From positions 1 through 64,000 of IMG/VR virus record IMGVR_UViG_3300023174_000042: a stretch of 64,000 bases of DNA; one strand, 5' to 3'. The notes beneath the pieces were generated by a model. The model had not been told where the DNA came from. It was given only the letters and a program-made list of their open reading frames with translations, and made no database searches. Shown here piece by piece: positions 9,064-56,422 of this stretch; positions within the stretch are counted from its first letter, which is position 1, and each line of letters starts with the position of its first letter. Both the position numbers and the translations under genes were made by a program.

Positions 9064-9291
9064 TTATTTTACAAATTTTATTGTATCAATAGAATAGTAA
9101 CAATAGTTTTCTTTTTCTATGTGACAATGTTCAACTTTAATTTTGATTGAATCATTTTTTATGTTGTTGTTTCCATAAGCATCGCAATTAGACTTACTTG
9201 ATTTACAACTAGTCAGTATAATATAAACATACATGACTATAAGTTTTATAGTTGTATACATAAAAGTTTTTTTATTAATTTCTAATTTCAT
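9064..9291 (-). CDS. small putative lipoprotein
   Basis: Hydrophobic stretch then LTSC lipobox-like, SCKSSKSNCDAY. Confidence 0.55.
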   Translation of the reverse strand: MKLEINKKTFMYTTIKLIVMYVYIILTSCKSSKSNCDAYGNNNIKNDSIKIKVEHCHIEKENYCYYSIDTIKFVK

Positions 9292-10982: not shown

Positions 10983-12104
10983 TTAATGGGAGTCACCTAC
11001 GTTGTTTTTTTCGCTGAATATGTGATAATCAGGATTGATAACTTTTCCAACTTTTTGACGATCACCGCTGATATGTTTTACAACAACACCTTCGTGCGGA
11101 ACTTTGGTTCCTTCAATAAAATTGTTAAATACAAAACTATCTTGAGTTTCTTTATTCCAATTACCTTGATAAAGTAAATCAACCACAGGTAAATCTAAGT
11201 CATTAAATATTCCCCTTTCAACTAGAAACTCACGATAAAACCCATCAACCTCAACGTCAAATCCAGAAAAACGAATATCACTTAATCCATAGTCATAATT
11301 TTTTTGTATTCCATGTCCATAGATCTCACCATAGATTACTATACCGGTTCCCAATCTTTCAGGGGTGTAATATTCTTTAACATACTTCCAAAGTTTGTTT
11401 TGGATATTGTATTGTTCTGCCACAGTTCTCCAAACATCAGTAGAATAAAATCCTTGAGATGTAGATCCTTTCTCTAAATTGTGGGATCCATAGACATAAT
11501 CGAATTCAACCCATTCATTACCAAAGAACTTTCTAACACGATCCCAAAGACTTATTCTTTTCTTTCTTACTATACCATAACGAGCATTTGTTCCGTGCAT
11601 TTTACGAGTGATAACAACCTCATCTTCTTCGGTGAATAACTCAGGAACATTCTTCAAGTTAGGAAACTTATAATAAACGTGGAAGTTAGGATTTTGGTGG
11701 TATTTAACCTTTCTACCTCCAACACTCATTTCAACCATCTTAACTGGCGGTTCGTATTTGGAAACCTCAAGTAATTCCATACAATCAGATCCTTCATATC
11801 TGTATTTATCAGGAACAAAACCTATTGGTATTATTAAACATTCAGAATATACTCCGCGAAGTTTTACAGTTCTAACTCTTTGACCTTTTCTCAAGTATCC
11901 TGTCACACCCAAACCATCAGAAAGTTTCAATGGTATTACAGCGTCGGTAGTCGCAACAACAACCAAATCAGTTACTTTATATTCACCTTTTTTAACTATT
12001 GCATTCCAACCACCAACTACCGCAAGTTCTATGTTATCTGCCCCTTCTATTGGTTTTATTTCACAAACTAAACCAACATAACATACGCTATTTAAATTTT
12101 CCAT
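10983..12104 (-). CDS. RNA ligase, Rnl2-like / DRB0094 family, with N-terminal OB-fold-like domain
   Basis: IKPIEGADNIE start; motif I KMHGTN, YGEIYG, FSGFD, EGVVVK, KVIN. Confidence 0.85.
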   Translation of the reverse strand: MENLNSVCYVGLVCEIKPIEGADNIELAVVGGWNAIVKKGEYKVTDLVVVATTDAVIPLKLSDGLGVTGYLRKGQRVRTVKLRGVYSECLIIPIGFVPDKYRYEGSDCMELLEVSKYEPPVKMVEMSVGGRKVKYHQNPNFHVYYKFPNLKNVPELFTEEDEVVITRKMHGTNARYGIVRKKRISLWDRVRKFFGNEWVEFDYVYGSHNLEKGSTSQGFYSTDVWRTVAEQYNIQNKLWKYVKEYYTPERLGTGIVIYGEIYGHGIQKNYDYGLSDIRFSGFDVEVDGFYREFLVERGIFNDLDLPVVDLLYQGNWNKETQDSFVFNNFIEGTKVPHEGVVVKHISGDRQKVGKVINPDYHIFSEKNNVGDSH

Positions 12105-13500: not shown

Positions 13501-13700
13501 AAAAACAAATATACGTAAGTTATTTGAATTAAAAAAAATAAATTGTAAAAAAAATAAAAAATTAGAAAAAATAAAATAAGAAGTATTATCACAGTAAGGT
13601 TTTTATTTTCATTCCACATATATGAAAAAAATTCATAAATATCGATCAATAAAAATCTTAAAACAAATGAAGTAAGAACTATTATAAATATTAAAATCAT
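13497..13700 (-). CDS. small membrane protein
   Basis: Very hydrophobic; overlaps both neighbours by 4 nt. Confidence 0.55.
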   Translation of the reverse strand: MILIFIIVLTSFVLRFLLIDIYEFFSYMWNENKNLTVIILLILFFLIFYFFYNLFFLIQITYVYLFL

Positions 13701-16700
13701 CTAATTATTAGTTTCAATGTCTCGGTTGAGTTTTCGGTCGAGAACACTGACACATAATAAACTCCTGATGGTAATTTAATATTTGACACATCAAATAGGT
13801 TAATACCTTTAATAATACTTACATTTAAAGAAAAAACTTCAGATCCTTTTGAATCTCTAACTATTAAAGTTCCATCACCAATCATTTGTTTATTATTTAA
13901 TACAACTTGAAAATCGCCTGAACTTGGATTTGGAAATATTGAAAAATAACCTTTTGAATTTCCATTACAAACAACATTTATCGGACCATGTTCTTTAAAT
14001 TGTCCGTCAATGTCGTATTGAATTAATTTATAATAATTATTTCCATCGATCGCATTTTCATCTTTTGTTGTATAATCTGTTATTTGATTTGAATTGCCAA
14101 CTGAATTTAAAGTGGTCAATTTAGACCAATTAATTCCATCTCTTGATTTTTGAATTTCAAAATAATCTGAGTTATGTTCAGTTGCTGTTTTCCAATTTAA
14201 AGTAATTAAATTATCACTACAAGTTCCATTGAAAGATAATAACTCAACTGGAAGTGCTTGTGAGTTTGGAGTTCCAATATTAAACCAACTAAACCCTTGT
14301 GTGTTATTACTTGATATCAAAAATGATTGTGGGTTTGCGTTTTGAGGAATTGTTACATGTGTTCCACAGGATTGCCAAGAAGTATGATTTGACCCTGGTG
14401 ATTTTATAATTCTACAAATCTGTGGTGTTGTCATACCAGTTATGTTATTTGCAAAAAACGTAATATTATATGGTGTTGAGTTTATGCTAGATGAATAATT
14501 TCCACCATTTGGAATTACTTCCCAATAACCATCAATAGAATAGTTTTGAATAAGTGAATTTGAAATTGTTAAAGGTAATCCGTTATATAAAGGACTTCCA
14601 TTAACAATAGGAGCTCCTGTATTATATCTAACGGTTAAAGATTGATTTACACCTGGCGATGAAGTAAAATTGATGTTTGAATATCTATTATAGGTTGATG
14701 TTCCAACAGGAAAAAATCCTTCAATACCGTTTGTAGGTAGGTTATTAAAAAACCTCTTAAATGGTCCTACAATTGTTCCTGTGTTATATGTTAAAGTTCC
14801 AGAATTTGAACTACTTGAACCTAATGTTAATAAATTAGTTGGTGTTGTAAAAATATTTCCTTGAATCATATTCAAGTTTCCTGTTACTACTACAGGATGG
14901 TTTAAGGTAAGGGTTGCTCCTCCCGTTTTATTTACTTTCATATTTAAAAGTTGTGAAGTTCCTGTTCCAATAAAAGATGAATTTTGACTTCCAACAAAAC
15001 TAACGGTTCCATTACTAGCGGTCAACGTTCCATTATTAACAATGTCATGATATATATGTAAACTATCATTTGTAAGATTTAAAGTTATTCCTGGATTTAC
15101 AAAAACATCATAAGCGTTTCCACTTGTAGTTAAAGTTGGGTTTGTATTTCCAATACAAATACCACCGTTTGCTTGATTTAATGTAAATACCTGACTTGAG
15201 TTTGTTGGTTGAGCATTTCCTGACATTCTAACAAAATGACCTGCTGGTTGTTTTTCATACCAATTTGTAGAAGTTGCCCAATCTGTAGATGTTAAACCTC
15301 CCCATAATAAATCAAATGAACCTATATTTGCTCCAAGTGAAGCCGCATTTGGCTGATTAAATGTAACTAATTTTTGATATGAAGTTGAGCATTGTCCATT
15401 AGTAACAGTCCATTGTAATGTATAAGATTGTCCGTAATTTCCTGTAAATGTTGATGTAGGTGAATTTACGTTTGAAAAAGAACCTCCAACTCCATTAAAA
15501 ACCATCCAAGTTCCAGTTTGACCTGCTTGTGGCGTGTTAGCTGCTAACTGAACCTGATTGATACCACAAGTAGAAACTCCAGTCTCCGGTTGACCTGCAT
15601 TTGCAACAGGTGCTGAAACTACTGTAACTGTTGTTGATGCGGTATTGGAACATCCATTTGAATTTGTTCCTGTTACAGTATAGGTTTGTGTTCCGTTTGG
15701 ATAAAAAGTAACTCCATTTGTTACTCCGTTATTCCAAGAGTAAGTGGTTGCTCCTGAACCGTTTAAAGATACTCCTGATCCTGAACAAATTGTTTGATTT
15801 GGTCCGGCACCAACTGATGGTAATGGGTTAACTGTAATTGTTCTACTTGAAGAGCTTGAACATCCATTTGAAGTGGCAATGACTGTATAAGTAGTTGTTG
15901 TAGTTGGAGTCGCAGTTGGGTTTGAAATTGAAGAATTATTAAGTGATGCTGATGGTGTCCATGAGTAAGTAATTGGTGGAGTTGTAGAACAAGTATTGAC
16001 CGATTGATTTACAACTTGACCTCCACCTAAACTTCCGCTCGAAATAGTCACTCCATTACAAGTAATTAGAAAAGTTGCTGTGTTGTCATTAAAAGTTCCT
16101 TGAGTTTCAATTGAAAATGTATAAGGTCCATTTGCTGTTGATCCAATTGTTATGGTATTTGTAGATCCTAAAGAATAATTTCCTCCTGAACCAATTAAAG
16201 ACCCTAAACTATTATATAATGTCCAACTTGTTTCATCCATAAATCCACCACTTGAAATTGTTACCACCAGATTCGCAGGAACAGATATACCTGAAACATT
16301 ACAATTAAGTTGAGTTGATGATCCAAGACAAATTGTATTTGATAAAGATGTGACACTGACAGTAGGCACTTGGTTTACTGTAATTGACGTAGATACACAA
16401 TTTGTACTAAATTGACTTCCATTATAGTTTCTTGCATAGTAGGTTGTGTTGGTAGTTGGTGAAACGGTAATTGAATTTCCTGTTCCGATTTGCGCCGTGC
16501 CACAACCTCCAGTATACCAATATACAGTTCCACTTGCTCCGTTTGCGGTTAATGTTGTAGATTGACCATTACATATTGTTGATTGTGTTGTAGAAATAGA
16601 AGTAGGATCTGGTGGTGGTGGGGTAGTACAAATAAGACCAATCTGAAAAGCGCTATTAGTGCTATATCCATGAACCAATATGTAATAAGTAAGACCTGGA

Positions 16701-17734
16701 ACTGATGTCCATTGATATGAAGCGGAAGTTGAAAGGCAACTTGGCCCGTTATCATCATTTCCTCCAACACACGTAAGTGATGAGCAGTTAGGTCCACTAA
16801 AAACGGAGATTTTGCTATCCCAAACTGTGTTACAAAGATAAGCCGTCATAATTTGACCTGTCCCTGTAATCTTAAACCAAACACCTGGCATTGTTTGTGT
16901 TACACTGCAAGTATTATTTTCTCCAGTTCCGCTATTAGTAGCATTTACAGTAGTGGCCGAAAGTAATTGACCACATGATATTGAATAAGCGTTACAAACC
17001 AAGTCGTTTGCCGGAGCAGAAGGAGCCGAACAAGTTATACAACTAACGGTAGATGTTCCACATGAAGACGCAGTTCCACAACTAGAATTTGTATTGTAAT
17101 GAACATAAACGGTTCCTGTATAGGATGAAGCCCAATTAAGAGGAGCAGTTCCATAAGCAACGATTGGTCCGTTATATGTTCCTGTATGAACAGTTATATA
17201 ACCACCCAGACTATATCCAAACTGATACGTTTGTCCGGCAACTACTCCTGATACGGTTGAATATTCACTTTGAAAGTTACAACTTGAAATTGTAACAGTT
17301 GTAGGTGTGTTTGGAGCAACCGCCGATCCGTATGAACTAGTATTTGTACATCCTGGTGTAGCAACACCACAACTTCCTATACAAGTTTGTCCTCCTGAAG
17401 TTGCCGTTCCAATTACAGGTTGAATGGTGTTTAACAGGACAGTTCCTACATTGTTTACTATCTGAACTCTCATTTCAGAAGGATATGACCCTGCAATTGT
17501 TCTAAAAACACGAATTGTTGAGCCTGAAGATGCTGAGAAATTATAGTTTAGTGGTCCATAACCTGAAGCAAGTGTTATGTTAGTTAGAACTGTAATACCA
17601 TTAACAGAAACAGAAACATAACCTCCATTCCAACCATCTCCCCAAGTATCGGTGAGTTTAATAGTATGGGTGCATGATTGTGAATAAAAAAAACTTGATA
17701 AAAACAAAAACAAATAAAGTAAAGCATTTCTCAT
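13697..17734 (-). CDS. large secreted Ig/PKD-like repeat protein with T9SS-type C-terminal sorting domain
   Basis: Signal peptide MRNALLYLFLFLSSFFYS/Q; T/S/N/G-rich beta domains; LPVELLSF; FSIFPNPSSG...LPSGVYYV...KLIIR. Confidence 0.85.
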   Translation of the reverse strand: MRNALLYLFLFLSSFFYSQSCTHTIKLTDTWGDGWNGGYVSVSVNGITVLTNITLASGYGPLNYNFSASSGSTIRVFRTIAGSYPSEMRVQIVNNVGTVLLNTIQPVIGTATSGGQTCIGSCGVATPGCTNTSSYGSAVAPNTPTTVTISSCNFQSEYSTVSGVVAGQTYQFGYSLGGYITVHTGTYNGPIVAYGTAPLNWASSYTGTVYVHYNTNSSCGTASSCGTSTVSCITCSAPSAPANDLVCNAYSISCGQLLSATTVNATNSGTGENNTCSVTQTMPGVWFKITGTGQIMTAYLCNTVWDSKISVFSGPNCSSLTCVGGNDDNGPSCLSTSASYQWTSVPGLTYYILVHGYSTNSAFQIGLICTTPPPPDPTSISTTQSTICNGQSTTLTANGASGTVYWYTGGCGTAQIGTGNSITVSPTTNTTYYARNYNGSQFSTNCVSTSITVNQVPTVSVTSLSNTICLGSSTQLNCNVSGISVPANLVVTISSGGFMDETSWTLYNSLGSLIGSGGNYSLGSTNTITIGSTANGPYTFSIETQGTFNDNTATFLITCNGVTISSGSLGGGQVVNQSVNTCSTTPPITYSWTPSASLNNSSISNPTATPTTTTTYTVIATSNGCSSSSSRTITVNPLPSVGAGPNQTICSGSGVSLNGSGATTYSWNNGVTNGVTFYPNGTQTYTVTGTNSNGCSNTASTTVTVVSAPVANAGQPETGVSTCGINQVQLAANTPQAGQTGTWMVFNGVGGSFSNVNSPTSTFTGNYGQSYTLQWTVTNGQCSTSYQKLVTFNQPNAASLGANIGSFDLLWGGLTSTDWATSTNWYEKQPAGHFVRMSGNAQPTNSSQVFTLNQANGGICIGNTNPTLTTSGNAYDVFVNPGITLNLTNDSLHIYHDIVNNGTLTASNGTVSFVGSQNSSFIGTGTSQLLNMKVNKTGGATLTLNHPVVVTGNLNMIQGNIFTTPTNLLTLGSSSSNSGTLTYNTGTIVGPFKRFFNNLPTNGIEGFFPVGTSTYNRYSNINFTSSPGVNQSLTVRYNTGAPIVNGSPLYNGLPLTISNSLIQNYSIDGYWEVIPNGGNYSSSINSTPYNITFFANNITGMTTPQICRIIKSPGSNHTSWQSCGTHVTIPQNANPQSFLISSNNTQGFSWFNIGTPNSQALPVELLSFNGTCSDNLITLNWKTATEHNSDYFEIQKSRDGINWSKLTTLNSVGNSNQITDYTTKDENAIDGNNYYKLIQYDIDGQFKEHGPINVVCNGNSKGYFSIFPNPSSGDFQVVLNNKQMIGDGTLIVRDSKGSEVFSLNVSIIKGINLFDVSNIKLPSGVYYVSVFSTENSTETLKLIIR

Positions 17735-17897
17735 AGCGTATAAAATTTTTTAATAAATTAATTTTACACTCACTTGAAGAATCCTTACTGGAAACCCCCA
17801 TCTACCATGGGCCGGTCGAGTTTTTAATAAATACACGAAAACACTTAAATTTTAAACAGAAAAACTCGTAAATTGAGCAAAACAACTATTTGGTTGA

Positions 17898-18305
17898 TTA
17901 TTTTTTAATTTTTACAGTATCAACAGGAATTAAGGTTACTTTTGTAACACCTCTTTTAATAAAATTAAGTTTTTTAGCCGTTCCATAACTAAGATCAATA
18001 ATAAATTTTGAACTTTTTGGTAGTCTGTCATTAACTTTAACATAACATACTGAGTCGTTGTTTTGATTTACAACTTTTAGAATTGTTCCAAACTTAAAGT
18101 GTTTATGAGCGGCCGTTAAACTATCGGCATGAAATCTTTCACCTGAAGCAGTTAATCTTCCTGTCCAATGTTGTCCGTAATAAGATGCGGTTCCTTCGTA
18201 ATTATTTGGTGTTGATATAAAAGAAACAAAAAATAATGAAGTAATTAAGATAAGTTTATTTAAAATTCCAATTTTTGTATTTAGTTTCGATTTTTCTTTT
18301 TCCAT
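17898..18305 (-). CDS. rlpA: RlpA-like lytic transglycosylase (DPBB fold)
   Basis: GTASYYG...TASGERF...LTAAHK...KVNDR...IIDLSY. Confidence 0.85.
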   Translation of the reverse strand: MEKEKSKLNTKIGILNKLILITSLFFVSFISTPNNYEGTASYYGQHWTGRLTASGERFHADSLTAAHKHFKFGTILKVVNQNNDSVCYVKVNDRLPKSSKFIIDLSYGTAKKLNFIKRGVTKVTLIPVDTVKIKK

Positions 18306-19506: not shown

Positions 19507-19572
19507 ATTAATAAATATAACAAATAAAAAAACATAAACCTTAAACTACGTAAAAGGTTTAAATCATTTGTC

Positions 19573-20958: not shown

Positions 20959-21393
20959 CTATTGTTTTACCATCCAAATTTTAACACTATTTTGTCCTGT
21001 AAAATAGTTTTTGAATTGACAATTTTCTATTAAACCTTGAATTAAATTGTAATCATAAATAGTTCCACTAATATGACCCCAAGGTGTGTTGTTTAATGTT
21101 AATGAATAACCAAAAACGTTTGGATATAAATTATATGTTGACTGAACACCATTAAAAGAATAAACAGTTTTTGAAACAAAAACAAGTGTGTCTGATCTTG
21201 TTTCTTGATTGAAACTTGTATTTAATATTTTTGTTATGACCCAAGTGGTGTTTTTTAAACTAATTGTTGAATCAACAGTGGTTGTGTCTGTGATAATAGG
21301 TTGTGGTGCCAATGGTTGTTGTGGTTTAATATCTTGTTTCACACAAGAAGTTATTGCCAAAATCAATAATAAAAGAAATGCCGCTTTTTTCAT
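20959..21393 (-). CDS. lipoprotein
   Basis: MKKAAFLLLLILAITSC lipobox. Confidence 0.75.
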   Translation of the reverse strand: MKKAAFLLLLILAITSCVKQDIKPQQPLAPQPIITDTTTVDSTISLKNTTWVITKILNTSFNQETRSDTLVFVSKTVYSFNGVQSTYNLYPNVFGYSLTLNNTPWGHISGTIYDYNLIQGLIENCQFKNYFTGQNSVKIWMVKQ

Positions 21394-25849: not shown

Positions 25850-25892
25850 CTCTGTGTTAAAAAGTAATACAAAAAGATGAACAAATAAATAT

Positions 25893-38093: not shown

Positions 38094-38132
38094 AATATAA
38101 TTTTATAATAAATATTCGTATATAGTAAAAAA

Positions 38133-38984
38133 TTAATAGTTCATTATCAATATTTCCTCTCCCATGTTTTGTTTCTCACCTTTTTTAGCGGAAGCGGCCT
38201 TTGCAAACTCTTTTTTAACCCAAGTGTATTGGTCTTCGGGGAACCATTCGTGAAGAAGTTCAAAGTCATAATAGGATAATGAAAACTTACCTTTAACTTC
38301 GTGTAATACATTTGCCAATCTTTCATGGTCTTGACGATCAAAGTCGTGATTGGAGTAGTATGATCCTTCTCCCACAACATAATAGGGTGGGTCAACATAA
38401 AAATATGTATTTGGTGAATCATATTTTTCTATCACTTCCTGAAAGTCCATATTTTCAACAAAAGTAATAGATTCGAACATCTTTTGCCACTTTTCATTTT
38501 TTAATTTGTTTATGAAAGATGTGAATTTAGAATGGTATTTACCTTTTAAATCAATAAACTTTGATTTTGAAGGATTGGCTCCTGAAAAAACTTGTGTTAA
38601 AACATAGATATATTTTGCGGCAACTTCATAGTCATAAGCCTTTGGGCTGAAGTTTTCTTCGAATATTTCAGCCTGAAACCTTATAAATTGTTCTTCACAA
38701 ATTGGATCTGTTGGTCGTATATCTTTTTTTTGAACAACTAATTTTTCACACTCTTGAAGTAATTTTTGGTGATCTTTCAAACATTGATACATATTAAAGT
38801 TCAACTTGTTAAAGTCGTTATACACAACGGTTTTTAAATTTGGGTAATCTTCCAAGTTCATCTTAAAAAATGTCCAAAATTGACCACTAAATGGTTCTAC
38901 AAATGTCTCAATGTCTTTAGGGATGTTAGGTATTATTAATTGTGGGGCGATTTTTGATTTACCTCCGATATAACTTACGCACAT
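38133..38984 (-). CDS. Dam-like (D12 class) N6-adenine DNA methyltransferase
   Basis: YIGGKSK, VEPFSG, YND, YVDPPY. Confidence 0.85.
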   Translation of the reverse strand: MCVSYIGGKSKIAPQLIIPNIPKDIETFVEPFSGQFWTFFKMNLEDYPNLKTVVYNDFNKLNFNMYQCLKDHQKLLQECEKLVVQKKDIRPTDPICEEQFIRFQAEIFEENFSPKAYDYEVAAKYIYVLTQVFSGANPSKSKFIDLKGKYHSKFTSFINKLKNEKWQKMFESITFVENMDFQEVIEKYDSPNTYFYVDPPYYVVGEGSYYSNHDFDRQDHERLANVLHEVKGKFSLSYYDFELLHEWFPEDQYTWVKKEFAKAASAKKGEKQNMGEEILIMNY

Positions 38985-44316: not shown

Positions 44317-44342
44317 TTTAAGTTGTTTTATAATAAATATCT

Positions 44343-45095: not shown

Positions 45096-45340
45096 TATAA
45101 ACTTTTAAATTTTTGTTCCCAAAATCCTCTCTGTTGATACATAACAGTAAAGTATTCTTGAAAAGATTTTATGACTATATCTTTTACGTCTTTTTTTAAT
45201 TCACCTTTTTGTAAATCTTGAGAAATTTTATCCAATAATTTTTTTTCAAATTGTTTAGATGTGTTTGAGTCAAAAAAATCTTTAATTTCTTTTCTGATCA
45301 ATACTTCAATTTCTTTTTTTTCTGTTGATGAAAGTGCCAT
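45095..45340 (-). CDS. hypothetical protein
   Basis: ORF track. Confidence 0.7.
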   Translation of the reverse strand: MALSSTEKKEIEVLIRKEIKDFFDSNTSKQFEKKLLDKISQDLQKGELKKDVKDIVIKSFQEYFTVMYQQRGFWEQKFKSL

Positions 45341-45768
45341 TATTTAAAAACCGCAATGTAAGTTAATGGAGCAATTATTACTGCCGAAATTATATTAAAT
45401 AAAACACCTTTGGTTTTAATTCTTTTGTTTTCCTTTTTTAAATCAAGATTTTCTTTTTCATAAATCTTAATTTTTTCATTTTTTTCTGAAATAATAATTC
45501 TGTTCAAGGAATCTTCTGACATCCATGATTTATTTTCTTTTTGAAGAAATAAGATTTTATTGTTTAACTCTAGTATTTCTTTTTTATCTAATTGGGACAA
45601 TTCTTTTAACTTATCGTAATCGTTAAGATCTATAAGTATTTTTTGGACCACGGAATATGGTATACACATTTTTGATGTGTCAGAATTTGAACTATTGTTT
45701 TTTTGGGAAAATACATTTAACCCAAATAAAATTATTACCAAAGTTGTAAATATTTTTTTCATGTTCAA
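45340..45768 (-). CDS. periplasmic coiled-coil protein with signal peptide and C-terminal TM (spanin-like candidate)
   Basis: MNMKKIFTTLVIILFGLNVFS/Q; C-terminal VLFNIISAVIIAPLTYIAVF. Confidence 0.5.
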   Translation of the reverse strand: MNMKKIFTTLVIILFGLNVFSQKNNSSNSDTSKMCIPYSVVQKILIDLNDYDKLKELSQLDKKEILELNNKILFLQKENKSWMSEDSLNRIIISEKNEKIKIYEKENLDLKKENKRIKTKGVLFNIISAVIIAPLTYIAVFK

Positions 45769-50473: not shown

Positions 50474-51928
50474 TTAACATAATTTATATATATTTTCATA
50501 CTTAAATACTTTAGTACGATATACAGTATTAATAGAATGAATTGTACGTATATAAAAATCCTTATCGAAATTTGTATCAGTATTTAAATAGAAATCCTCC
50601 GAGTCAATCATATTTATGTTAGAAATAACAATATTTTTACAAATATTTTCACAATCATTCACCTTATTAATTCTCGATAATGAATGATCTGTAAATATAT
50701 CACAACCTTTTTCTTCTTGTTGTATAAAAATATATTTTCTATTAACATTTTGTAATTTATCGGATTCAACTAATCCGTGATATGTTGAGTTTGACCCCGC
50801 ACACCAATCAAGAATAATATCACCATCGTTAGTGAATGATGTAATAATGTCCCTCATTAATATAATTGATTTAGGAGTGTTAAACGTTTTTTCACCGTAT
50901 AGTTTCTTCAACACATCAGTTGCCTGTGTATTTCCATATTCAGTTTTATCCATAATGGTCTTCATAGGTTGGAATGTTTTTACTTTTTCCATGTAGTTGA
51001 TAACACCGTTATTTTCATGTAAAACATCATATGGTTTATTTTTATTTAAAATAGTCTCATATGTTGGTACCCATCTACCCCACTTTTCTCCATATTTTGG
51101 AAATATTACTTTATGAGTTTTAGAGTATTTCTCCTCAATATTTTTAACATATTCACTAATTTTATTATTCATATCATCAGTGTATATTTTTGTTTTACTG
51201 TAGTCTTTACAGACATTATTAACAAACTTTTTTAGTAAAAGATATTCATTCTTACTTATTGTTGAGATTTTATTAGTTCCTTTTTCAATTAAGAATGGGT
51301 AAAATTGTCCTTGTCTATCGCAAACTAACTTTGCATTATATGCCAACAGACTTCTAGGTTTTACGTCTTTACCCTTGTCTTTACTTTCATTCAAAACACC
51401 TTCACCATATTCAAGTAAATTAATATTTTTAGCACAAACCACTAAATATTCATTAGTCGTTACTAAATCTTTTTTATTCCTTCTTCCACCACCACCTCTA
51501 TTTGACACAACAGTTGCAGTTGTTAATACATTTTTTTCACCAAAAACATCAACACATAAATTTTCCAAATTTCTTTTCTCATTGTGATCAATAGAAATAA
51601 CCATAACCCCATTATCGGAAAGTAGTTCTCTAACAATAATTAATCTAGGTAACATCCAAGAAATCCAATCTGAATGATAATTTAATGAATCGGTAGTATT
51701 AAATGTATCATTATAAATGAAATCCTCATTTCCGGTGTTATAAGGTACATCAGCATATGCTAATTTTATTTTTCCCTTATAAATGGAACTTAACCCTATT
51801 AATGATTGTAAATTATCACCTTTAACACCTAAAACATCAAATTCATCACTAAAATTAATGTTTGGAATTTTAACACCGTCTAAAATTTCTTTGTACTCGT
51901 TTGGTACTGTATTTTTATAAACTACCAT
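50474..51928 (-). CDS. mod: type III Mod-like DNA methyltransferase with variant motifs
   Basis: GDNL..L, YADVPYNTG (DPPY variant), SWMLPRL, ISID, FNTPKS, ILDWCAGSNST (DFFAGSGTT variant). Confidence 0.75.
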   Translation of the reverse strand: MVVYKNTVPNEYKEILDGVKIPNINFSDEFDVLGVKGDNLQSLIGLSSIYKGKIKLAYADVPYNTGNEDFIYNDTFNTTDSLNYHSDWISWMLPRLIIVRELLSDNGVMVISIDHNEKRNLENLCVDVFGEKNVLTTATVVSNRGGGGRRNKKDLVTTNEYLVVCAKNINLLEYGEGVLNESKDKGKDVKPRSLLAYNAKLVCDRQGQFYPFLIEKGTNKISTISKNEYLLLKKFVNNVCKDYSKTKIYTDDMNNKISEYVKNIEEKYSKTHKVIFPKYGEKWGRWVPTYETILNKNKPYDVLHENNGVINYMEKVKTFQPMKTIMDKTEYGNTQATDVLKKLYGEKTFNTPKSIILMRDIITSFTNDGDIILDWCAGSNSTYHGLVESDKLQNVNRKYIFIQQEEKGCDIFTDHSLSRINKVNDCENICKNIVISNINMIDSEDFYLNTDTNFDKDFYIRTIHSINTVYRTKVFKYENIYKLC

Positions 51929-54011: not shown

Positions 54012-54051
54012 ACAAATATACGAATAAAGTTGAGATTTGTTTCAAGTTTTT
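54012..54051 (-). repeat. 40-bp direct repeat copy 2 (contains TATATTTG)
   Basis: 35/40 identical to 50301-50340. Confidence 0.85.
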
Positions 54052-56422
54052 ACAAAACTTTTGACAAATTATTTTCTTTTTTAATTTTCACCACATGGTC
54101 ACCCCATGAGGACACAGCACTATTATGCGATATAACAAACACTTTTTCAAAATAATCTTTAATCTTCACAAAGAATTCATAAACCATATCTAAGTTCTCA
54201 GGAGATATTTTACCAAAGACTTCGTCTAATACGACGAGATTCGGAGTTGGTAAAGTACATATCTTTGTTAATACCGCTCTTAATGCTAATGATGATAAAG
54301 TCTTCTCATATCCACTTCCTGATGTCATTAGTTTTTCAACACCTGTTCCATTATCAATCATCATAAACTCAACTTCATTTTTGTCGTTAATTCTTATTTC
54401 CATTTTGAAATAACATGAATCTTCCATAAGTCTTTGAAGTTCCGTATTGATTAAAGGCATCATAGTTTTCATAATCATTTTTGAAATCCCATTTTTACCA
54501 TAAAGTTCCAAATAGATCTTAAAGATTTTTTCTTTCTCTTCTTCTTCTTTGATTTTAACAATCATTTTTTTGTTATTATCAATCTTTTCATCAAGTGATT
54601 TAATTGATGTTTCATTTGTTAAAATTGAGTTTGTAATAGTTCTATTTTGAATTTCTAAATCTTCTAATCTAAGGTCAGCCTTTATCAACTGTGCGTCTAT
54701 TTTATGATTTTCAGAAATTTTATCTTGTATTTCTTCCCAACGTTTAATCTTATCGTTTAATGAACCAATCTTTAAATCACAACTTTCAACAGATATTTCA
54801 TATTTTTCTTTAACCAGTTTGTTTTTTTCGTATTCATCAAATTCTTTTTTGAGTCTCACAAATGATTGTTCTTTTTTGAAAAAATCATTCATAAGTGTTG
54901 TTTTTGTGTTTTTTTTCACAATAAGTCCATTTAACTCTGCAATTTTTGAATTTGTGATTGCTGCGTTCATTAACTCAATTCCACAATGTTCGCATTTGAT
55001 TCCACCCTCAACTGAAGATTTTAATTTGTTGATTGATTCTATTTCAGTGTCAATTTGAATAATTTCTTTATAAACATTGTTATATTGTTCTTTAATTTCA
55101 TCATGTTTATCCTCATGGTAAAACTCAGATGGTTCAACGACTTTGATTTCAGAAATTTTTGTTAAATAACCTGACTTTTCTTTTTCAATTTCTTTTATTT
55201 CATCTTTGGTTTTATCAGGATTTAATAAACTTAATTCTTGATCAATGTTTGTATGTTTTCTTTTTAACATATCATCACGATATGTTTTTCCTTTCGAAAT
55301 TGCTTGATTTACGTCTGATAAATTTTTCTTTTCTTCTTCAATTTTATTTTTTAATTCTATAATTGAAGTTTGGTATGTTTCAATATCAGTTTTTAATTGT
55401 TCTGAAGAATATAGATTTGATATCTTTTGTTTTGAAAACTCTAAATAGATTTCTTTTGCGACTTCTTCTTTTCTTTTCAAAAACTCAAGTCCCATAAATC
55501 TTGATAACACCTGACCTCTTGCTGTTGGTTTTGATTCCAATAAATCTTCAAGGTTTGATCCTGTTGTAAGGATCGTCATTAAAAAGTCTTCCTTTGTTCC
55601 AATTGAGTTTTTAATGAAGGCTTCTGTTTCTCTTCTTTGTTCTCCCGTAAAATTTAATAAAGAACCATCTGACAACTTTTTAAAAAAGTCCAGTTCGGTT
55701 TTGACATTCCATTCACCTTTTTTGGACATCTTTCTTTCGATGTTTCTAACAATAACATAATCTTCACCATCAATTGTAATTTCACCTTTAACATGAACGT
55801 TATCTTTGTTTGAAAATCGGTTAAATATTTCTTCTGCTTTTGTTGTTTTTGTTGTTTCGTTAAAAAACAAAAACATTAAAAGATCCACCGTTAATACAGT
55901 TTTTCCACCAAAATTGGGAGGATCAGATTCAACCACCACAATACCATTTAAACTATCAAAGTTTAATCTTTGGTTTTCACCGTAGGATAAAAAGTTTGAA
56001 AATTCAATATTTCTGATATACCATTTTTTAAATTGTGATGAAGTTTCTTCATCTCCACTCATCTTATTTTCGACCATTTTGTTGATGTTTAATACATCAT
56101 CAGTTTTGTCTTCATGTCCTTTTGATTTAAGGTAATTTGAAATAAGATCAAGTTGGTATTGTGTGTCAGAGATATTCACCGACACATCAATACTTTGTAT
56201 AGTTTCACTTTCAACATTTTTTGCCTTTGTTAAAACATTAACGTTTGTTGTGTTATACTTTTTAGAAAAATAATGCTTGACACTTTTGATTTTATCTTGT
56301 GTAAAGTTTTCTGGTACGTCTTCCCAAACAACTTGTATAGTGGGATTTTCAAATTTTGAAAAGTCCAAATCTTTTATCATAATATCGTAATTGAATAATT
56401 TCGGTGGATTGAATAAATCCAT
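54050..56422 (-). CDS. sbcC: SbcC/Rad50/T4 gp46-like ATPase
   Basis: FSNFLSYG, NFGGKT, Zn hook CEHCG, signature SGSGYE, LDEVF, VISH. Confidence 0.9.
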   Translation of the reverse strand: MDLFNPPKLFNYDIMIKDLDFSKFENPTIQVVWEDVPENFTQDKIKSVKHYFSKKYNTTNVNVLTKAKNVESETIQSIDVSVNISDTQYQLDLISNYLKSKGHEDKTDDVLNINKMVENKMSGDEETSSQFKKWYIRNIEFSNFLSYGENQRLNFDSLNGIVVVESDPPNFGGKTVLTVDLLMFLFFNETTKTTKAEEIFNRFSNKDNVHVKGEITIDGEDYVIVRNIERKMSKKGEWNVKTELDFFKKLSDGSLLNFTGEQRRETEAFIKNSIGTKEDFLMTILTTGSNLEDLLESKPTARGQVLSRFMGLEFLKRKEEVAKEIYLEFSKQKISNLYSSEQLKTDIETYQTSIIELKNKIEEEKKNLSDVNQAISKGKTYRDDMLKRKHTNIDQELSLLNPDKTKDEIKEIEKEKSGYLTKISEIKVVEPSEFYHEDKHDEIKEQYNNVYKEIIQIDTEIESINKLKSSVEGGIKCEHCGIELMNAAITNSKIAELNGLIVKKNTKTTLMNDFFKKEQSFVRLKKEFDEYEKNKLVKEKYEISVESCDLKIGSLNDKIKRWEEIQDKISENHKIDAQLIKADLRLEDLEIQNRTITNSILTNETSIKSLDEKIDNNKKMIVKIKEEEEKEKIFKIYLELYGKNGISKMIMKTMMPLINTELQRLMEDSCYFKMEIRINDKNEVEFMMIDNGTGVEKLMTSGSGYEKTLSSLALRAVLTKICTLPTPNLVVLDEVFGKISPENLDMVYEFFVKIKDYFEKVFVISHNSAVSSWGDHVVKIKKENNLSKVL

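What the first reader, a model, noticed from the sequence alone, without database searches (positions are those of the whole stretch)
13697..17734. Phage-encoded 1345-aa type IX secretion substrate
Seen: SPI signal peptide with Gln at +1, adhesin-like Ig/PKD modules, the LPVELLSF motif and a terminal (Y/F)PNP...G.Y...K sorting domain; TATTTATT 92 nt upstream. Known: such CTDs direct export by the Bacteroidota T9SS, and Gln at +1 is typical of Bacteroidota secreted proteins. Inference: the phage uses the host T9SS to display or release a large surface protein (superinfection exclusion, aggregation, grazing defence).
Basis: partly seen in the sequence, partly recalled or inferred. Interest (0 to 1): 0.6.

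Follow-up and report, generated by a model that had tools for sequence, protein, structure and literature searches.

The report
Jumbo-phage T9SS cargo gene cassette
A giant freshwater phage of Flavobacteria-like hosts carries its own large, non-enzymatic "sticky" protein with all the sequence signals for export through the host's type IX secretion system. The gene is part of a swappable cassette headed by a conserved, phage-only RNA leader.

Summary
**Observation confirmed.** Window 13697-17734 (minus strand) encodes a 1345-aa protein with:
- a signal peptide and Gln at +1;
- a string of beta-sandwich binding modules;
- an Fn3-type "LPVELLSF" module;
- a type A T9SS sorting domain that passes both curated cut-offs.

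**The contig is phage.** It is a 272.6-kb T4-like jumbo phage, not host DNA. About 16 independent viral contigs keep the gene between the same phage neighbours, and its codon usage is native to the phage.

**The idea is not new.** Bellas et al. 2020 described phage-encoded T9SS type A cargo.

**What is new:**
- The family is large (1096 protein hits).
- Relatives swap their middle modules and C-terminal tails.
- Giant surface proteins of freshwater Flavobacteriales MAGs are 50-75% identical over shared modules.
- The phage encodes a second cargo with a type B (CHU_C) domain.
- Every phage copy follows a general phage promoter box plus a ~57-nt leader. The leader occurs in 66 viral contigs, once per genome, and shows compensatory base pairs. 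It matched no Rfam family and was not found in 156 Flavobacteriales genomes.

**Untested.** Function (surface remodelling, adhesion or exclusion) and T9SS dependence are inferred, not shown.

The parts
13697..17734 (-). CDS of the 1345-aa secreted protein (P0001), stop codon included
   Evidence: ORF list and translation. There are 1096 homologues at E<=1e-5. The gene is syntenic in related phage contigs and its codon usage is native to the phage.
17681..17734 (-). Signal peptide, aa 1-18. The predicted SPI cut falls between Ser18 and Gln19, putting Gln at +1
   Evidence: Read from the sequence. The [S/A]-Q junction is kept across homologues and across unrelated passengers. No SignalP run was available.
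17369..17677 (-). D1, aa 20-122: beta-sandwich with the DTWGDGWNG motif. CUB-like is a lead only
   Evidence: AlphaFold model, pLDDT mostly 81-97 here. The top Foldseek hit is cubilin CUB domains. A sister cassette (L110) carries a Pfam CUB domain. The atlas gives no name.
17030..17335 (-). D2, aa 134-235: beta-sandwich that pairs with D3 like the tandem collagen-binding domains of ColG
   Evidence: VIA match to 5iku over model residues 115-350: Z 11.0, 199 aligned, but rmsd 9.4 A.
16628..17029 (-). D3, aa 236-369: PPC / ColG collagen-binding-domain-like beta-sandwich. This is the most conserved module
   Evidence: VIA match to 2o8o: Z 11.2, rmsd 2.6 A, 105 aligned. Many columns are invariant. 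The module is shared at 50-75% identity with Flavobacteriales MAG proteins.
16373..16612 (-). Ig-like domain, aa 375-454 (PF19081 Ig_7, 'CHU_C associated')
   Evidence: Pfam 35 bits against a cut-off of 27.3. VIA match to GhpA repeats (9flx): Z 11.8, rmsd 1.9 A, 27% identity.
14315..16306 (-). Variable middle, aa 477-1140: Ig-like repeats (~aa 590-800), then a beta-helix-like and beta-sandwich block (~aa 800-1140). This stretch is replaced or deleted in other phage variants
   Evidence: Module map by BLAST. The second model has mean pLDDT 67 and is confident for aa ~889-1039. No enzyme fold was found, only weak generic hits.
13958..14260 (-). Fn3-type 'LPVELLSF' module, aa 1159-1259. It is present in every length class and in most unrelated passengers
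   Evidence: VIA wide search: Z 10-11, rmsd 2.2-2.8 A, about 90-100 aligned to Fn3 domains. Shared segments.
13700..13939 (-). T9SS type A C-terminal sorting domain, aa 1266-1345
   Evidence: PF18962 36.8 bits (cut-off 27), TIGR04183 27.3 bits (cut-off 23). Six-frame hit at 13703-13939.
17767..17823 (-). Conserved ~57-nt 5' leader with a predicted three-helix RNA fold: P1 CUC/GAG, P2 a long bulged hairpin, P3 a variable hairpin
   Evidence: Alignments. 98.2% of cells pair, against at most 57% when partners are slid. 3 pairs / 16 cells are compensatory, reached by 0 of 500 shuffles. The covariance model scores 83.4 bits and finds a single copy in the genome. No Rfam match. Found in 66 viral contigs and in none of 156 Flavobacteriales genomes.
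17826..17833 (-). TATTTATT, a variant of the phage's general promoter-like box TATTTAT[AT]. It ends a few nt (~6) before the leader's first helix
   Evidence: Position. Conserved in relatives. The box is 6.5-fold enriched upstream of genes in the sense orientation, and occurs in 54 of 116 upstream regions against 13.3 in shuffles.

Best explanation
The gene belongs to a T4-like jumbo phage of freshwater Flavobacteriales-type hosts. It encodes a non-catalytic, multi-module binding protein.

**Proposed route (inferred).** The infected cell exports the protein in two steps:
1. The Sec system takes it across the inner membrane. Signal peptidase I then cuts the signal peptide, leaving Gln at +1.
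2. The host's type IX secretion system takes it across the outer membrane, directed by the type A C-terminal domain.

**Proposed expression (inferred).** Transcription starts at the phage's own general promoter box (TATTTAT[AT]). The mRNA begins with a conserved structured leader that is specific to this cassette and probably controls its stability or translation.

**The cassette.** It consists of promoter box + leader + signal peptide + passenger + Fn3 module + C-terminal tail. The ends are conserved while the passenger modules are exchanged among phages and with giant surface proteins of the host lineage.

**Most likely role (inferred).** The protein changes what the infected cell's surface binds or shows. 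That could mean adhesion to particles or polymers, or masking of T9SS-dependent phage receptors (superinfection exclusion).

**Shown:** sequence signals, phage origin, conservation, modularity, cellular relatives, leader conservation and pairing.
**Not shown:** export route, timing of expression, function.
For: - **Export signals.** The CTD is above both curated cut-offs. The signal peptide and the S|Q junction are conserved.
- **Real phage.** Structural and replication genes are present, and CheckV gives 93% completeness.
- **Native gene.** Synteny holds on both sides in about 16 contigs, and codon usage is native.
- **Selection for export.** All variants of 812 aa or more among the 10 scanned match the type A CTD (5 of 7 over Pfam's cut-off). 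84 of the 120 best hits end in a type-A-like tail by a regex screen.
- **Binding, not catalysis.** The folds found are ColG-type collagen-binding/PPC, GhpA-like Ig, Fn3 and CUB-like. No enzyme fold appeared.
- **Host lineage.** Cellular relatives occur almost only in freshwater Flavobacteriales MAGs, with Crocinitomicaceae the commonest, in cellular gene contexts. The closest cultured capsid relative includes Flavobacterium phage immuto.
- **A second cargo.** The same phage encodes a type B CTD cargo, plus at least six other ORFs with the S|Q junction.
- **Leader.**
- **Promoter box.**
- **Precedent.** Bellas 2020.
- **Context for exclusion.** Flavobacterium phage resistance maps to gliding/T9SS genes (titles listed).
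Against: - There is no experimental or expression evidence.
- The host is not identified. T9SS presence in it is inferred only from its lineage.
- The 622- and 768-aa variants lack any recognised CTD. An apparent similarity of their tail to the CTD was an artefact. So T9SS export may not be essential to the family's function.
- The block at aa ~800-1140 is only moderately modelled (pLDDT 67) and barely tested by fold search, so a hidden activity is not excluded.
- The leader's P2 helix is nearly invariant, so most of the support for its fold comes from P3 plus single sequences.
Confidence: 0.72

Rival explanations
1. Assembly chimera or host flank: the gene is bacterial DNA joined to a phage contig near its end.
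For: The gene lies only ~14 kb from the contig's left end. Local GC is higher, 0.34-0.36 against ~0.28. Close cellular relatives exist.
Against: The same phage neighbours flank it on both sides in about 16 independent assemblies, and phage genes continue to the contig end. GC3 and codon bias are phage-like, and the GC rise is at codon position 2 only. Cellular loci have GC 0.34-0.67 and no phage synteny. The phage-only leader precedes every phage copy.
Confidence: 0.02
2. A secreted enzyme: the protein is a depolymerase or lyase (capsule, slime or polysaccharide) whose catalytic part is the unassigned beta-helix-like block at aa ~800-1140. It is released through the T9SS to help progeny escape or to feed the host.
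For: Cryophage's T9SS cargo are glycoside hydrolases. The confident part of model 2 is a stack of repeated strands. Fold search barely tested that region.
Against: That block is absent from most family members, which keep only binding modules. No Pfam, NCBIfam or PHROG enzyme family matches. No enzyme fold scored among the hits.
Confidence: 0.1
3. A virion protein: an Ig/Fn3-rich decoration or fibre component, as Hoc is in T4. The 'signal peptide' and CTD would be relics of the cellular gene it came from.
For: Ig-like and Fn3 modules are common on phage particles. Some fold hits are phage tail-tip Fn3 domains. The promoter box is shared with tail sheath and tail fibre genes.
Against: The signal peptide, the Q junction and the CTD are conserved across hundreds of diverged copies and across unrelated passengers, so they are not decaying relics. 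The gene lies among small accessory genes, RNA ligase and methyltransferases, more than 60 kb from the structural block. An N-terminal Sec signal would remove the protein from the cytoplasm, where virions assemble.
Confidence: 0.06
4. A selfish or neutral mobile cassette: leader plus gene spread among jumbo phages by recombination without benefit to phage or host. Alternatively the leader is a DNA-level recombination or protein-binding site rather than an RNA.
For: The cassette sits in non-syntenic contexts in the 520-kb and 339-kb contigs. Passengers are swapped. The core of the leader is an inverted repeat, which would equally suit a dimeric DNA-binding protein.
Against: The ORFs are intact, with conserved export signals, in all complete copies. 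The core has strongly conserved columns. Compensatory changes in P1 and P3, and a stem-extending insertion in L122, fit RNA pairing better than a DNA site.
Confidence: 0.1

Closest known systems
T9SS cargo genes of 'Cryophage', a 76-kb Bacteroidetes phage from cryoconite (Bellas et al. 2020, Nat Commun, PMC7468147)
   Same: The genes are phage-encoded and carry a T9SS type A sorting domain. They vary between phage variants. The authors propose hijack of the host T9SS and a role in competition or superinfection exclusion.
   Different: Cryophage's cargo are an endoglucanase, a GH39 and a PA14 protein in a 76-kb phage. Here the cargo is a non-catalytic chain of binding modules in a 273-kb T4-like jumbo phage. 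The phage also has a type B cargo. A dedicated conserved leader was found with the gene in 66 viral contigs. I did not compare the sequences directly.
Giant T9SS surface proteins of Bacteroidota: the cellular homologue P0013 in a Flavobacteriia MAG, Crocinitomicaceae MAG proteins, and GhpA grappling hooks of Aureispira (PDB 9flx and related entries)
   Same: P0013 has the same module types: PPC/collagen-binding-like, Ig_7 and Fn3/LPVELLSF. It is 64% identical over the N-terminal core, and other cellular proteins reach 75% over D3+Ig. The Ig domain superposes on GhpA repeats with Z 11.8.
   Different: The cellular proteins are mostly larger (1000-2800 aa) and lie in cellular gene neighbourhoods at GC 0.34-0.67. 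They lack the leader. The direction of transfer is unresolved: the AU test does not reject phage monophyly, p = 0.36.
Phage 'moron' surface proteins and superinfection-exclusion proteins, such as lambda Lom/Bor and T4 Imm/Sp (from my own knowledge, not tested here)
   Same: These too are phage-encoded proteins that act at the host envelope during infection or lysogeny rather than in the virion.
   Different: They are small, use Sec or lipoprotein routes in Proteobacteria, and have no T9SS signal. There is no sequence or fold relation to them.
Cis-regulatory leader RNAs (riboswitches, RNA thermometers, phage 5' UTR elements) as catalogued in Rfam 15
   Same: The leader is a short conserved structured element between promoter and start codon, with a variable-length peripheral hairpin.
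   Different: No Rfam family matches at E<=1. No ligand or partner is known. The element is tied to one gene cassette and was found only in viral contigs.

Membership tests
T9SS type A cargo (TIGR04183 / PF18962 proteins) | C-terminal sorting domain that matches the curated model above its cut-off and lies at the extreme C-terminus | tested here: met
   PF18962 36.8 bits against 27. TIGR04183 27.3 bits against 23. aa 1266-1345 of 1345.
T9SS type A cargo (TIGR04183 / PF18962 proteins) | N-terminal Sec signal peptide, for the first step across the inner membrane | tested here: met
   Basic n-region, 11-residue hydrophobic core and S|Q junction, conserved in homologues. This is by inspection only; no dedicated predictor was available.
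T9SS type A cargo (TIGR04183 / PF18962 proteins) | The producing cell has a T9SS (Bacteroidota / FCB group) | tested here: inconclusive
   The host was not identified. Cellular relatives come almost only from Flavobacteriales and Saprospiraceae MAGs. The cellular homologue sits next to an S8 peptidase with its own Por_Secre_tail. The closest cultured capsid relative includes a Flavobacterium phage. I did not search for T9SS machinery genes.
T9SS type A cargo (TIGR04183 / PF18962 proteins) | Secretion depends on the T9SS, and the CTD is removed by the PorU-type sortase | not testable with these tools
   Needs secretion assays in wild-type and T9SS-null strains.
Bacteroidota 'Q-rule' signal peptidase I substrates (from my own knowledge: Bochtler et al. 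2018) | Gln at position +1 after the SPI cleavage site | tested here: met
   Gln19 follows the predicted cut. 95 of the 120 best hits match a strict ...SQ(x)C[TL]H pattern, and most of the rest show AQ or SQ. Unrelated passengers behind the same leader also have S/A/T-Q. The cleavage site itself is predicted, not measured.
Phage-encoded T9SS cargo (as in Cryophage, PMC7468147) | Encoded in a bona fide phage genome rather than in host DNA | tested here: met
   Hallmark genes, synteny, native codon usage.
Phage-encoded T9SS cargo (as in Cryophage, PMC7468147) | The cargo gene varies between closely related phage variants | tested here: met
   Length classes of 622, 768, ~815, ~915 and ~1345 aa, and up to 1796 aa, occupy the same locus with swapped middle modules and tails.
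PPC / bacterial collagen-binding domain (ColG s3b type) | Fold match covering the whole domain; sequence-family match | tested here: inconclusive
   The fold matches: Z 11.2, rmsd 2.6 A, 105 of 110 residues. No Pfam PPC model matches, and Ca-binding residues were not checked.
T9SS type B cargo (CHU_C / SprB-like), for the phage's second cargo at G000 224469-226916 | CHU_C domain above the cut-off; adjacent PorP/SprF-type partner gene | tested here: inconclusive
   CHU_C scores 45.4-49.1 bits against 27, and SprB repeats score 58 bits. No PF11751 match was found in the phage, but the control genomes were silent too, so this negative is not validated.
Any Rfam 15 RNA family, for the 5' leader | Covariance-model match | tested here: not met
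   No match at E<=1 in window 17600-18000.

The most novel reading that the evidence does not exclude
The leader is a new class of phage-specific cis-regulatory RNA. Together with a signal peptide and an Fn3+tail export/anchor module, it forms a portable 'surface-display cassette'. Jumbo phages of freshwater Bacteroidota would use this cassette to plug in interchangeable binding domains borrowed from host adhesins, and so to reprogramme the infected cell's surface through the host T9SS. The short, CTD-less tail that always follows the Fn3 module would then be a second, still unrecognised sorting or anchoring signal.
Probability: 0.3. Interest if true: 0.8.

Novelty: new member of a known kind. 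Interest (0 to 1): 0.6.

Why it matters
T9SS cargo build the surface coat, adhesins and gliding machinery of Bacteroidota. Flavobacterium phages select for resistance mutations in those same systems. A large and widespread family of phage-borne cargo genes suggests that abundant lake phages routinely rewrite their host's surface during infection. That has consequences for particle attachment, phage-phage competition and carbon flow in lakes.

The conserved ends and swappable middle give a natural test bed for what the T9SS needs in order to accept a substrate. The phage-only leader is a candidate new regulatory RNA that can be tested directly with reporters.

Tried and rejected
- **Short tail as a truncated CTD: rejected.** hhalign gave 92% probability. 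That result came entirely from one row, P0013, whose tail is a half CTD. Without it the probability is 0.5%, no better than shuffled columns.
- **Near-identical DNA in isolated phages.** None found by megablast.
- **Protein search of isolated phages.** Only module-level hits, in four uncultured huge phages.
- **Rfam on the leader.** No match.
- **Raw count of TATTTATT in the window.** At chance. Only the test by position and orientation shows enrichment.
- **Fold searches of aa 790-1140.** No clear match. The region was barely tested because the Fn3 domain filled the hit lists.
- **Protein atlas for D1 and for the Fn3 module.** Unnamed clusters only; leads, not evidence.
- **Direction of transfer.** The D3+Ig tree interleaves phage and cell sequences, but its backbone is weak. 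The AU test does not reject phage monophyly, p = 0.36.
- **PorP/SprF in the phage.** No match, but the controls were silent.
- **uORF reading of the leader (MVDGGFQ*).** Unlikely. The positions that vary are non-synonymous while the third codon positions are invariant.
- **Not used.** The big representative protein search and complex prediction were not needed.

Full report
**1. The observation**

Window 13697-17734 holds one uninterrupted ORF of 1345 codons.
- The product starts with a typical signal peptide. Its predicted cut, '...FFYS|QSC', puts Gln19 at +1.
- It contains LPVELLSF at aa 1161-1168.
- It ends in a type A T9SS sorting domain. PF18962 scores 36.8 bits against a cut-off of 27, and TIGR04183 scores 27.3 against 23, over aa 1266-1345.
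- An Ig_7 domain (PF19081, 35 bits) lies at aa 375-454.
- TATTTATT lies at 17826-17833, 92 nt before the ATG.

'PKD' is the only label that no model supports for this protein.

**2. Phage or host?**

The window is the first 64 kb of a 272,576-b IMG/VR virus record that CheckV rates 93% complete.
- The record encodes tail sheath, baseplate wedge, a T4-type major head protein, a collagen-like tail fibre, a family B DNA polymerase, ribonucleotide reductase and a helicase.
- Coding density is 93%.
- The nearest cultured capsid relatives are a Microcystis phage (44% identity) and Flavobacterium phage vB_FspM_immuto (41%).

The gene is only ~14 kb from the contig end and sits in a local GC bump, so I tested contamination directly.
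- **Relatives.** A scan of IMG/VR found 31 contigs with relatives, including contigs of 216 kb and 292 kb.
- **Synteny.** In about 16 of them the homologue has the same phage genes on both sides. Upstream are a 416-aa protein and a DPBB/RlpA-like exported protein. Downstream are a set of small ORFs, an RNA ligase and an AAA ATPase.
- **Codon usage.** GC3 is 0.162 against 0.200 +/- 0.032 for the genome. The codon-bias score lies at z = +0.5.
- **The GC bump.** It comes only from codon position 2 (0.518, z = +2.7), which reflects the Thr/Ser/Asn/Gly-rich composition.

Chimerism and a host flank are therefore excluded for practical purposes.

A read-level check was attempted. I worked beside those places afterwards. 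Word matches show the 5.5-kb stretch in lake and freshwater metagenomes from 9 studies. None of them is an RNA run.

**3. Anatomy of the protein**

An AlphaFold model of aa 20-480 (mean pLDDT 82) is all-beta.
- aa ~236-369 superpose on the ColG collagen-binding / PPC domain (Z 11.2, rmsd 2.6 A, 105 residues).
- aa ~134-369 superpose on the tandem ColG s3a-s3b pair.
- aa ~372-455 superpose on the Ig repeats of the T9SS-secreted grappling-hook protein GhpA (Z 11.8, rmsd 1.9 A, 27% identity).
- D1 (aa 20-122, DTWGDGWNG motif) is a beta-sandwich with only a CUB-like lead.

A second model, of aa 790-1265, has mean pLDDT 67.
- It shows a stack of repeated strands at aa ~889-1039.
- The LPVELLSF module is a confident Fn3-type sandwich (Z 10-11).

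No enzyme family or enzyme fold turned up anywhere. The aa 800-1140 block is only weakly tested.

**4. The family**

The word-index protein search returned 1096 proteins at E<=1e-5. The best 120 are nearly all metagenomic, on contigs of up to 523 kb. The members fall into length classes of 622, ~768, ~815, ~915, ~1345 and up to ~1800 aa.
- All keep the signal peptide, the N-terminal core (aa 1-377 or 1-476) and the Fn3 module.
- The middle, aa 477-1140, is exchanged or deleted.
- All scanned classes of 812 aa or more match the type A CTD, most of them above the cut-off.
- The 622- and 768-aa classes end instead in a ~40-aa tail ('...G-x-x-x-E-x-Y-x-D-G-x-x-K/R-x-x-I-K/R') that no model recognises.
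- An hhalign similarity between that tail and the CTD was an artefact of a single row and is withdrawn.

**5. Cellular relatives and host lineage**

P0013 is 64% identical over the core and 51% over aa 621-1250. It lies on a 107-kb contig of a Flavobacteriia MAG among RecJ, MlaD, an amidase and an S8 peptidase with its own T9SS CTD. That is a cellular neighbourhood.

A scan of species-representative genomes with the core alignment found 40 loci.
- Nearly all are in freshwater Flavobacteriales MAGs. Crocinitomicaceae is the commonest label, many of those from a lake time series. There are also Saprospiraceae.
- Their GC is 0.34-0.67 and they show no phage synteny.
- They share mostly D2/D3/Ig, at 50-75% identity, inside proteins of 1000-2800 aa.

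On a D3+Ig tree, phage and cellular sequences interleave, but the backbone is weak. The AU test does not reject phage monophyly (p = 0.36). The gene was clearly exchanged with this host lineage, but the direction and the number of events are open.

**6. The rest of the phage's secretome**

The same genome encodes a second T9SS cargo at 224469-226916 (minus strand, 815 aa).
- It has an S|Q signal peptide, SprB repeats, a PKD-like domain and a type B CHU_C domain (45-49 bits against a cut-off of 27).
- No PorP/SprF partner was detected, but that negative has no working control.

At least five more small ORFs carry the same S|Q junction, one of them with a CAP domain. Three ORFs have lipoboxes, and the DPBB neighbour has an N-terminal anchor.

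**7. Promoter box and leader**

The 163-nt spacer upstream of the gene is far better conserved than the coding sequence.

*The box.* TATTTATT is a variant of TATTTAT[AT].
- This box is the commonest 8-mer in this phage's intergenic upstream regions. It occurs in 54 of 116 regions, against 13.3 +/- 3.3 in shuffles.
- It is 6.5-fold enriched upstream of genes in the sense orientation, usually 3-40 nt from the start codon.
- It is present before the tail sheath, tail fibre and type B cargo genes.

*The leader.* About 6 nt after the box begins a ~57-nt element (17767-17823).
- It occurs once in the genome.
- It matches no Rfam family.
- It precedes every phage homologue, including those in non-syntenic 520-kb and 339-kb contigs. 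It precedes none of the 41 cellular loci.
- An exact-pattern scan found it in 66 viral contigs.
- In each locus with enough downstream sequence (57 of 62 examined) it is followed, 34-69 nt later, by a gene for a protein with a Bacteroidota-type signal peptide.

*The passengers.* Some are unrelated to this family: 691-, 665-, 357-, 318- and 133-aa proteins.
- Most of them still end in the Fn3 module plus a short tail or a CTD.
- Where Pfam sees anything in them, it sees CUB, Ig_7 or Por_Secre_tail, and never an enzyme.

*The RNA fold.* I propose P1 CUC/GAG, P2 a bulged hairpin, and P3 a variable hairpin.
- 98.2% of cells pair, against at most 57% when the partners are slid.
- Three pairs carry compensatory changes in 16 cells, a level reached by 0 of 500 shuffles.
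- P3 takes a stem-extending insertion in one lineage.

*Caveats.*
- I derived the structure from these same sequences.
- P2 is almost invariant.
- The later loci were retrieved with a pattern that covers P2.

*Phage-only, as far as tested.* A covariance model finds nothing significant in five MAGs that carry cellular homologues (best 21 bits). It finds nothing in 151 further genomes of the same order.

*Not a uORF.* That reading is unlikely, because the variable positions would be non-synonymous while the third codon positions are invariant.

**8. Mechanism**

*Shown:*
- A native, conserved phage gene carries a complete set of Sec and T9SS type A export signals.
- Its modules are of binding type.
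- It has conserved ends and a swappable middle.
- Its relatives are host-lineage surface proteins.
- It has a dedicated conserved leader behind a general phage promoter box.

*Inferred:*
- Transcription from that box, possibly together with late genes.
- Leader-dependent control of expression.
- Export by Sec and then by the host T9SS.
- Display on, or release from, the infected cell.
- A role in adhesion or in masking T9SS-dependent receptors.

The last point borrows from reports that Flavobacterium phage resistance maps to gliding and T9SS genes (titles) and from the proposal of Bellas et al..

**9. Novelty**

Phage-encoded T9SS type A cargo that varies between phage variants was described in 2020 for a 76-kb Bacteroidetes phage (PMC7468147). 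It is the only such paper my library searches returned. The finding as given is therefore a new member of a known kind.

The parts I did not find described are:
- the size and modular logic of this family in jumbo phages;
- type A and type B cargo together in one phage;
- the close kinship to Crocinitomicaceae-type giant adhesins;
- the CTD-less Fn3+tail ending;
- above all, the phage-only structured leader that defines the cassette.

Noticed in passing
G000 224469-226916 (minus strand), outside the window; locus L009:469-2916: A second T9SS cargo in the same phage, 815 aa. It has an S|Q signal peptide, SprB repeats, a PKD-like domain and a type B CHU_C sorting domain (45-49 bits against a cut-off of 27). 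A homologous 811-aa SprB/CHU_C gene lies next to the type A cargo in a 339-kb contig (L047). No PorP/SprF partner was found in the phage, but that negative has no working control.
   Followed up: partly
window 17767-17823 (minus strand), and 66 IMG/VR contigs (L012-L042, L089-L150): A ~57-nt conserved leader with a predicted three-helix RNA fold and some compensatory changes. It matches no Rfam family and occurs once per genome. It always lies 34-69 nt before a gene for a signal-peptide protein. It was not found in 156 Flavobacteriales genomes.
   Followed up: yes
whole G000; in the window for example 19510-19517, 25884-25891, 38107-38114, 44332-44339 (minus strand): TATTTAT[AT] is the phage's dominant promoter-like box. 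It occurs in 54 of 116 intergenic upstream regions against 13.3 expected, and it lies before the tail sheath and tail fibre genes. It resembles the T4 late promoter TATAAATA in form.
   Followed up: partly
L024, L026-L038, L016 and others (622- and 768-aa variants); L090, L104, L110, L145: An alternative ~40-aa C-terminal tail ('...GxxxExYxDGxxKxxIK') always follows the Fn3/LPVELLSF module, even behind unrelated passengers. No T9SS model recognises it. It may be an unrecognised sorting or anchoring signal.
   Followed up: partly
window 17898-18305 (minus strand): The gene just upstream, conserved in most related contigs, encodes a 135-aa DPBB_1 / RlpA-like lytic-transglycosylase-type protein (59 bits) with an N-terminal membrane anchor or signal. 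It is another envelope-directed phage product.
   Followed up: no
window 45340-45768 and 9064-9291, 20959-21393; G000 198843-200281, 211918-212526, 218190-218693: A small phage secretome. There are at least five further ORFs with the Bacteroidota S|Q signal-peptide junction, one with a CAP / cysteine-rich secretory domain, and three ORFs with lipoboxes.
   Followed up: partly
L045 (520-kb contig) and L047 (339-kb contig): Huge-phage-like contigs carry the same cassette in unrelated neighbourhoods. One has SmpB, thioredoxin and a Fapy glycosylase. The other has a sigma-70 factor, TerC, ClpP and a GDSL lipase. The cassette therefore moves between phage lineages.
   Followed up: partly
They lie in a T-rich small ORF downstream of the gene.
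   Followed up: no
window 10983-12104, 38133-38984, 50474-51928, 54050-56422 (all minus strand): The accessory region around the gene also encodes a T4-type RNA ligase, two DNA methyltransferases and an SbcC-like nuclease subunit.
   Followed up: no
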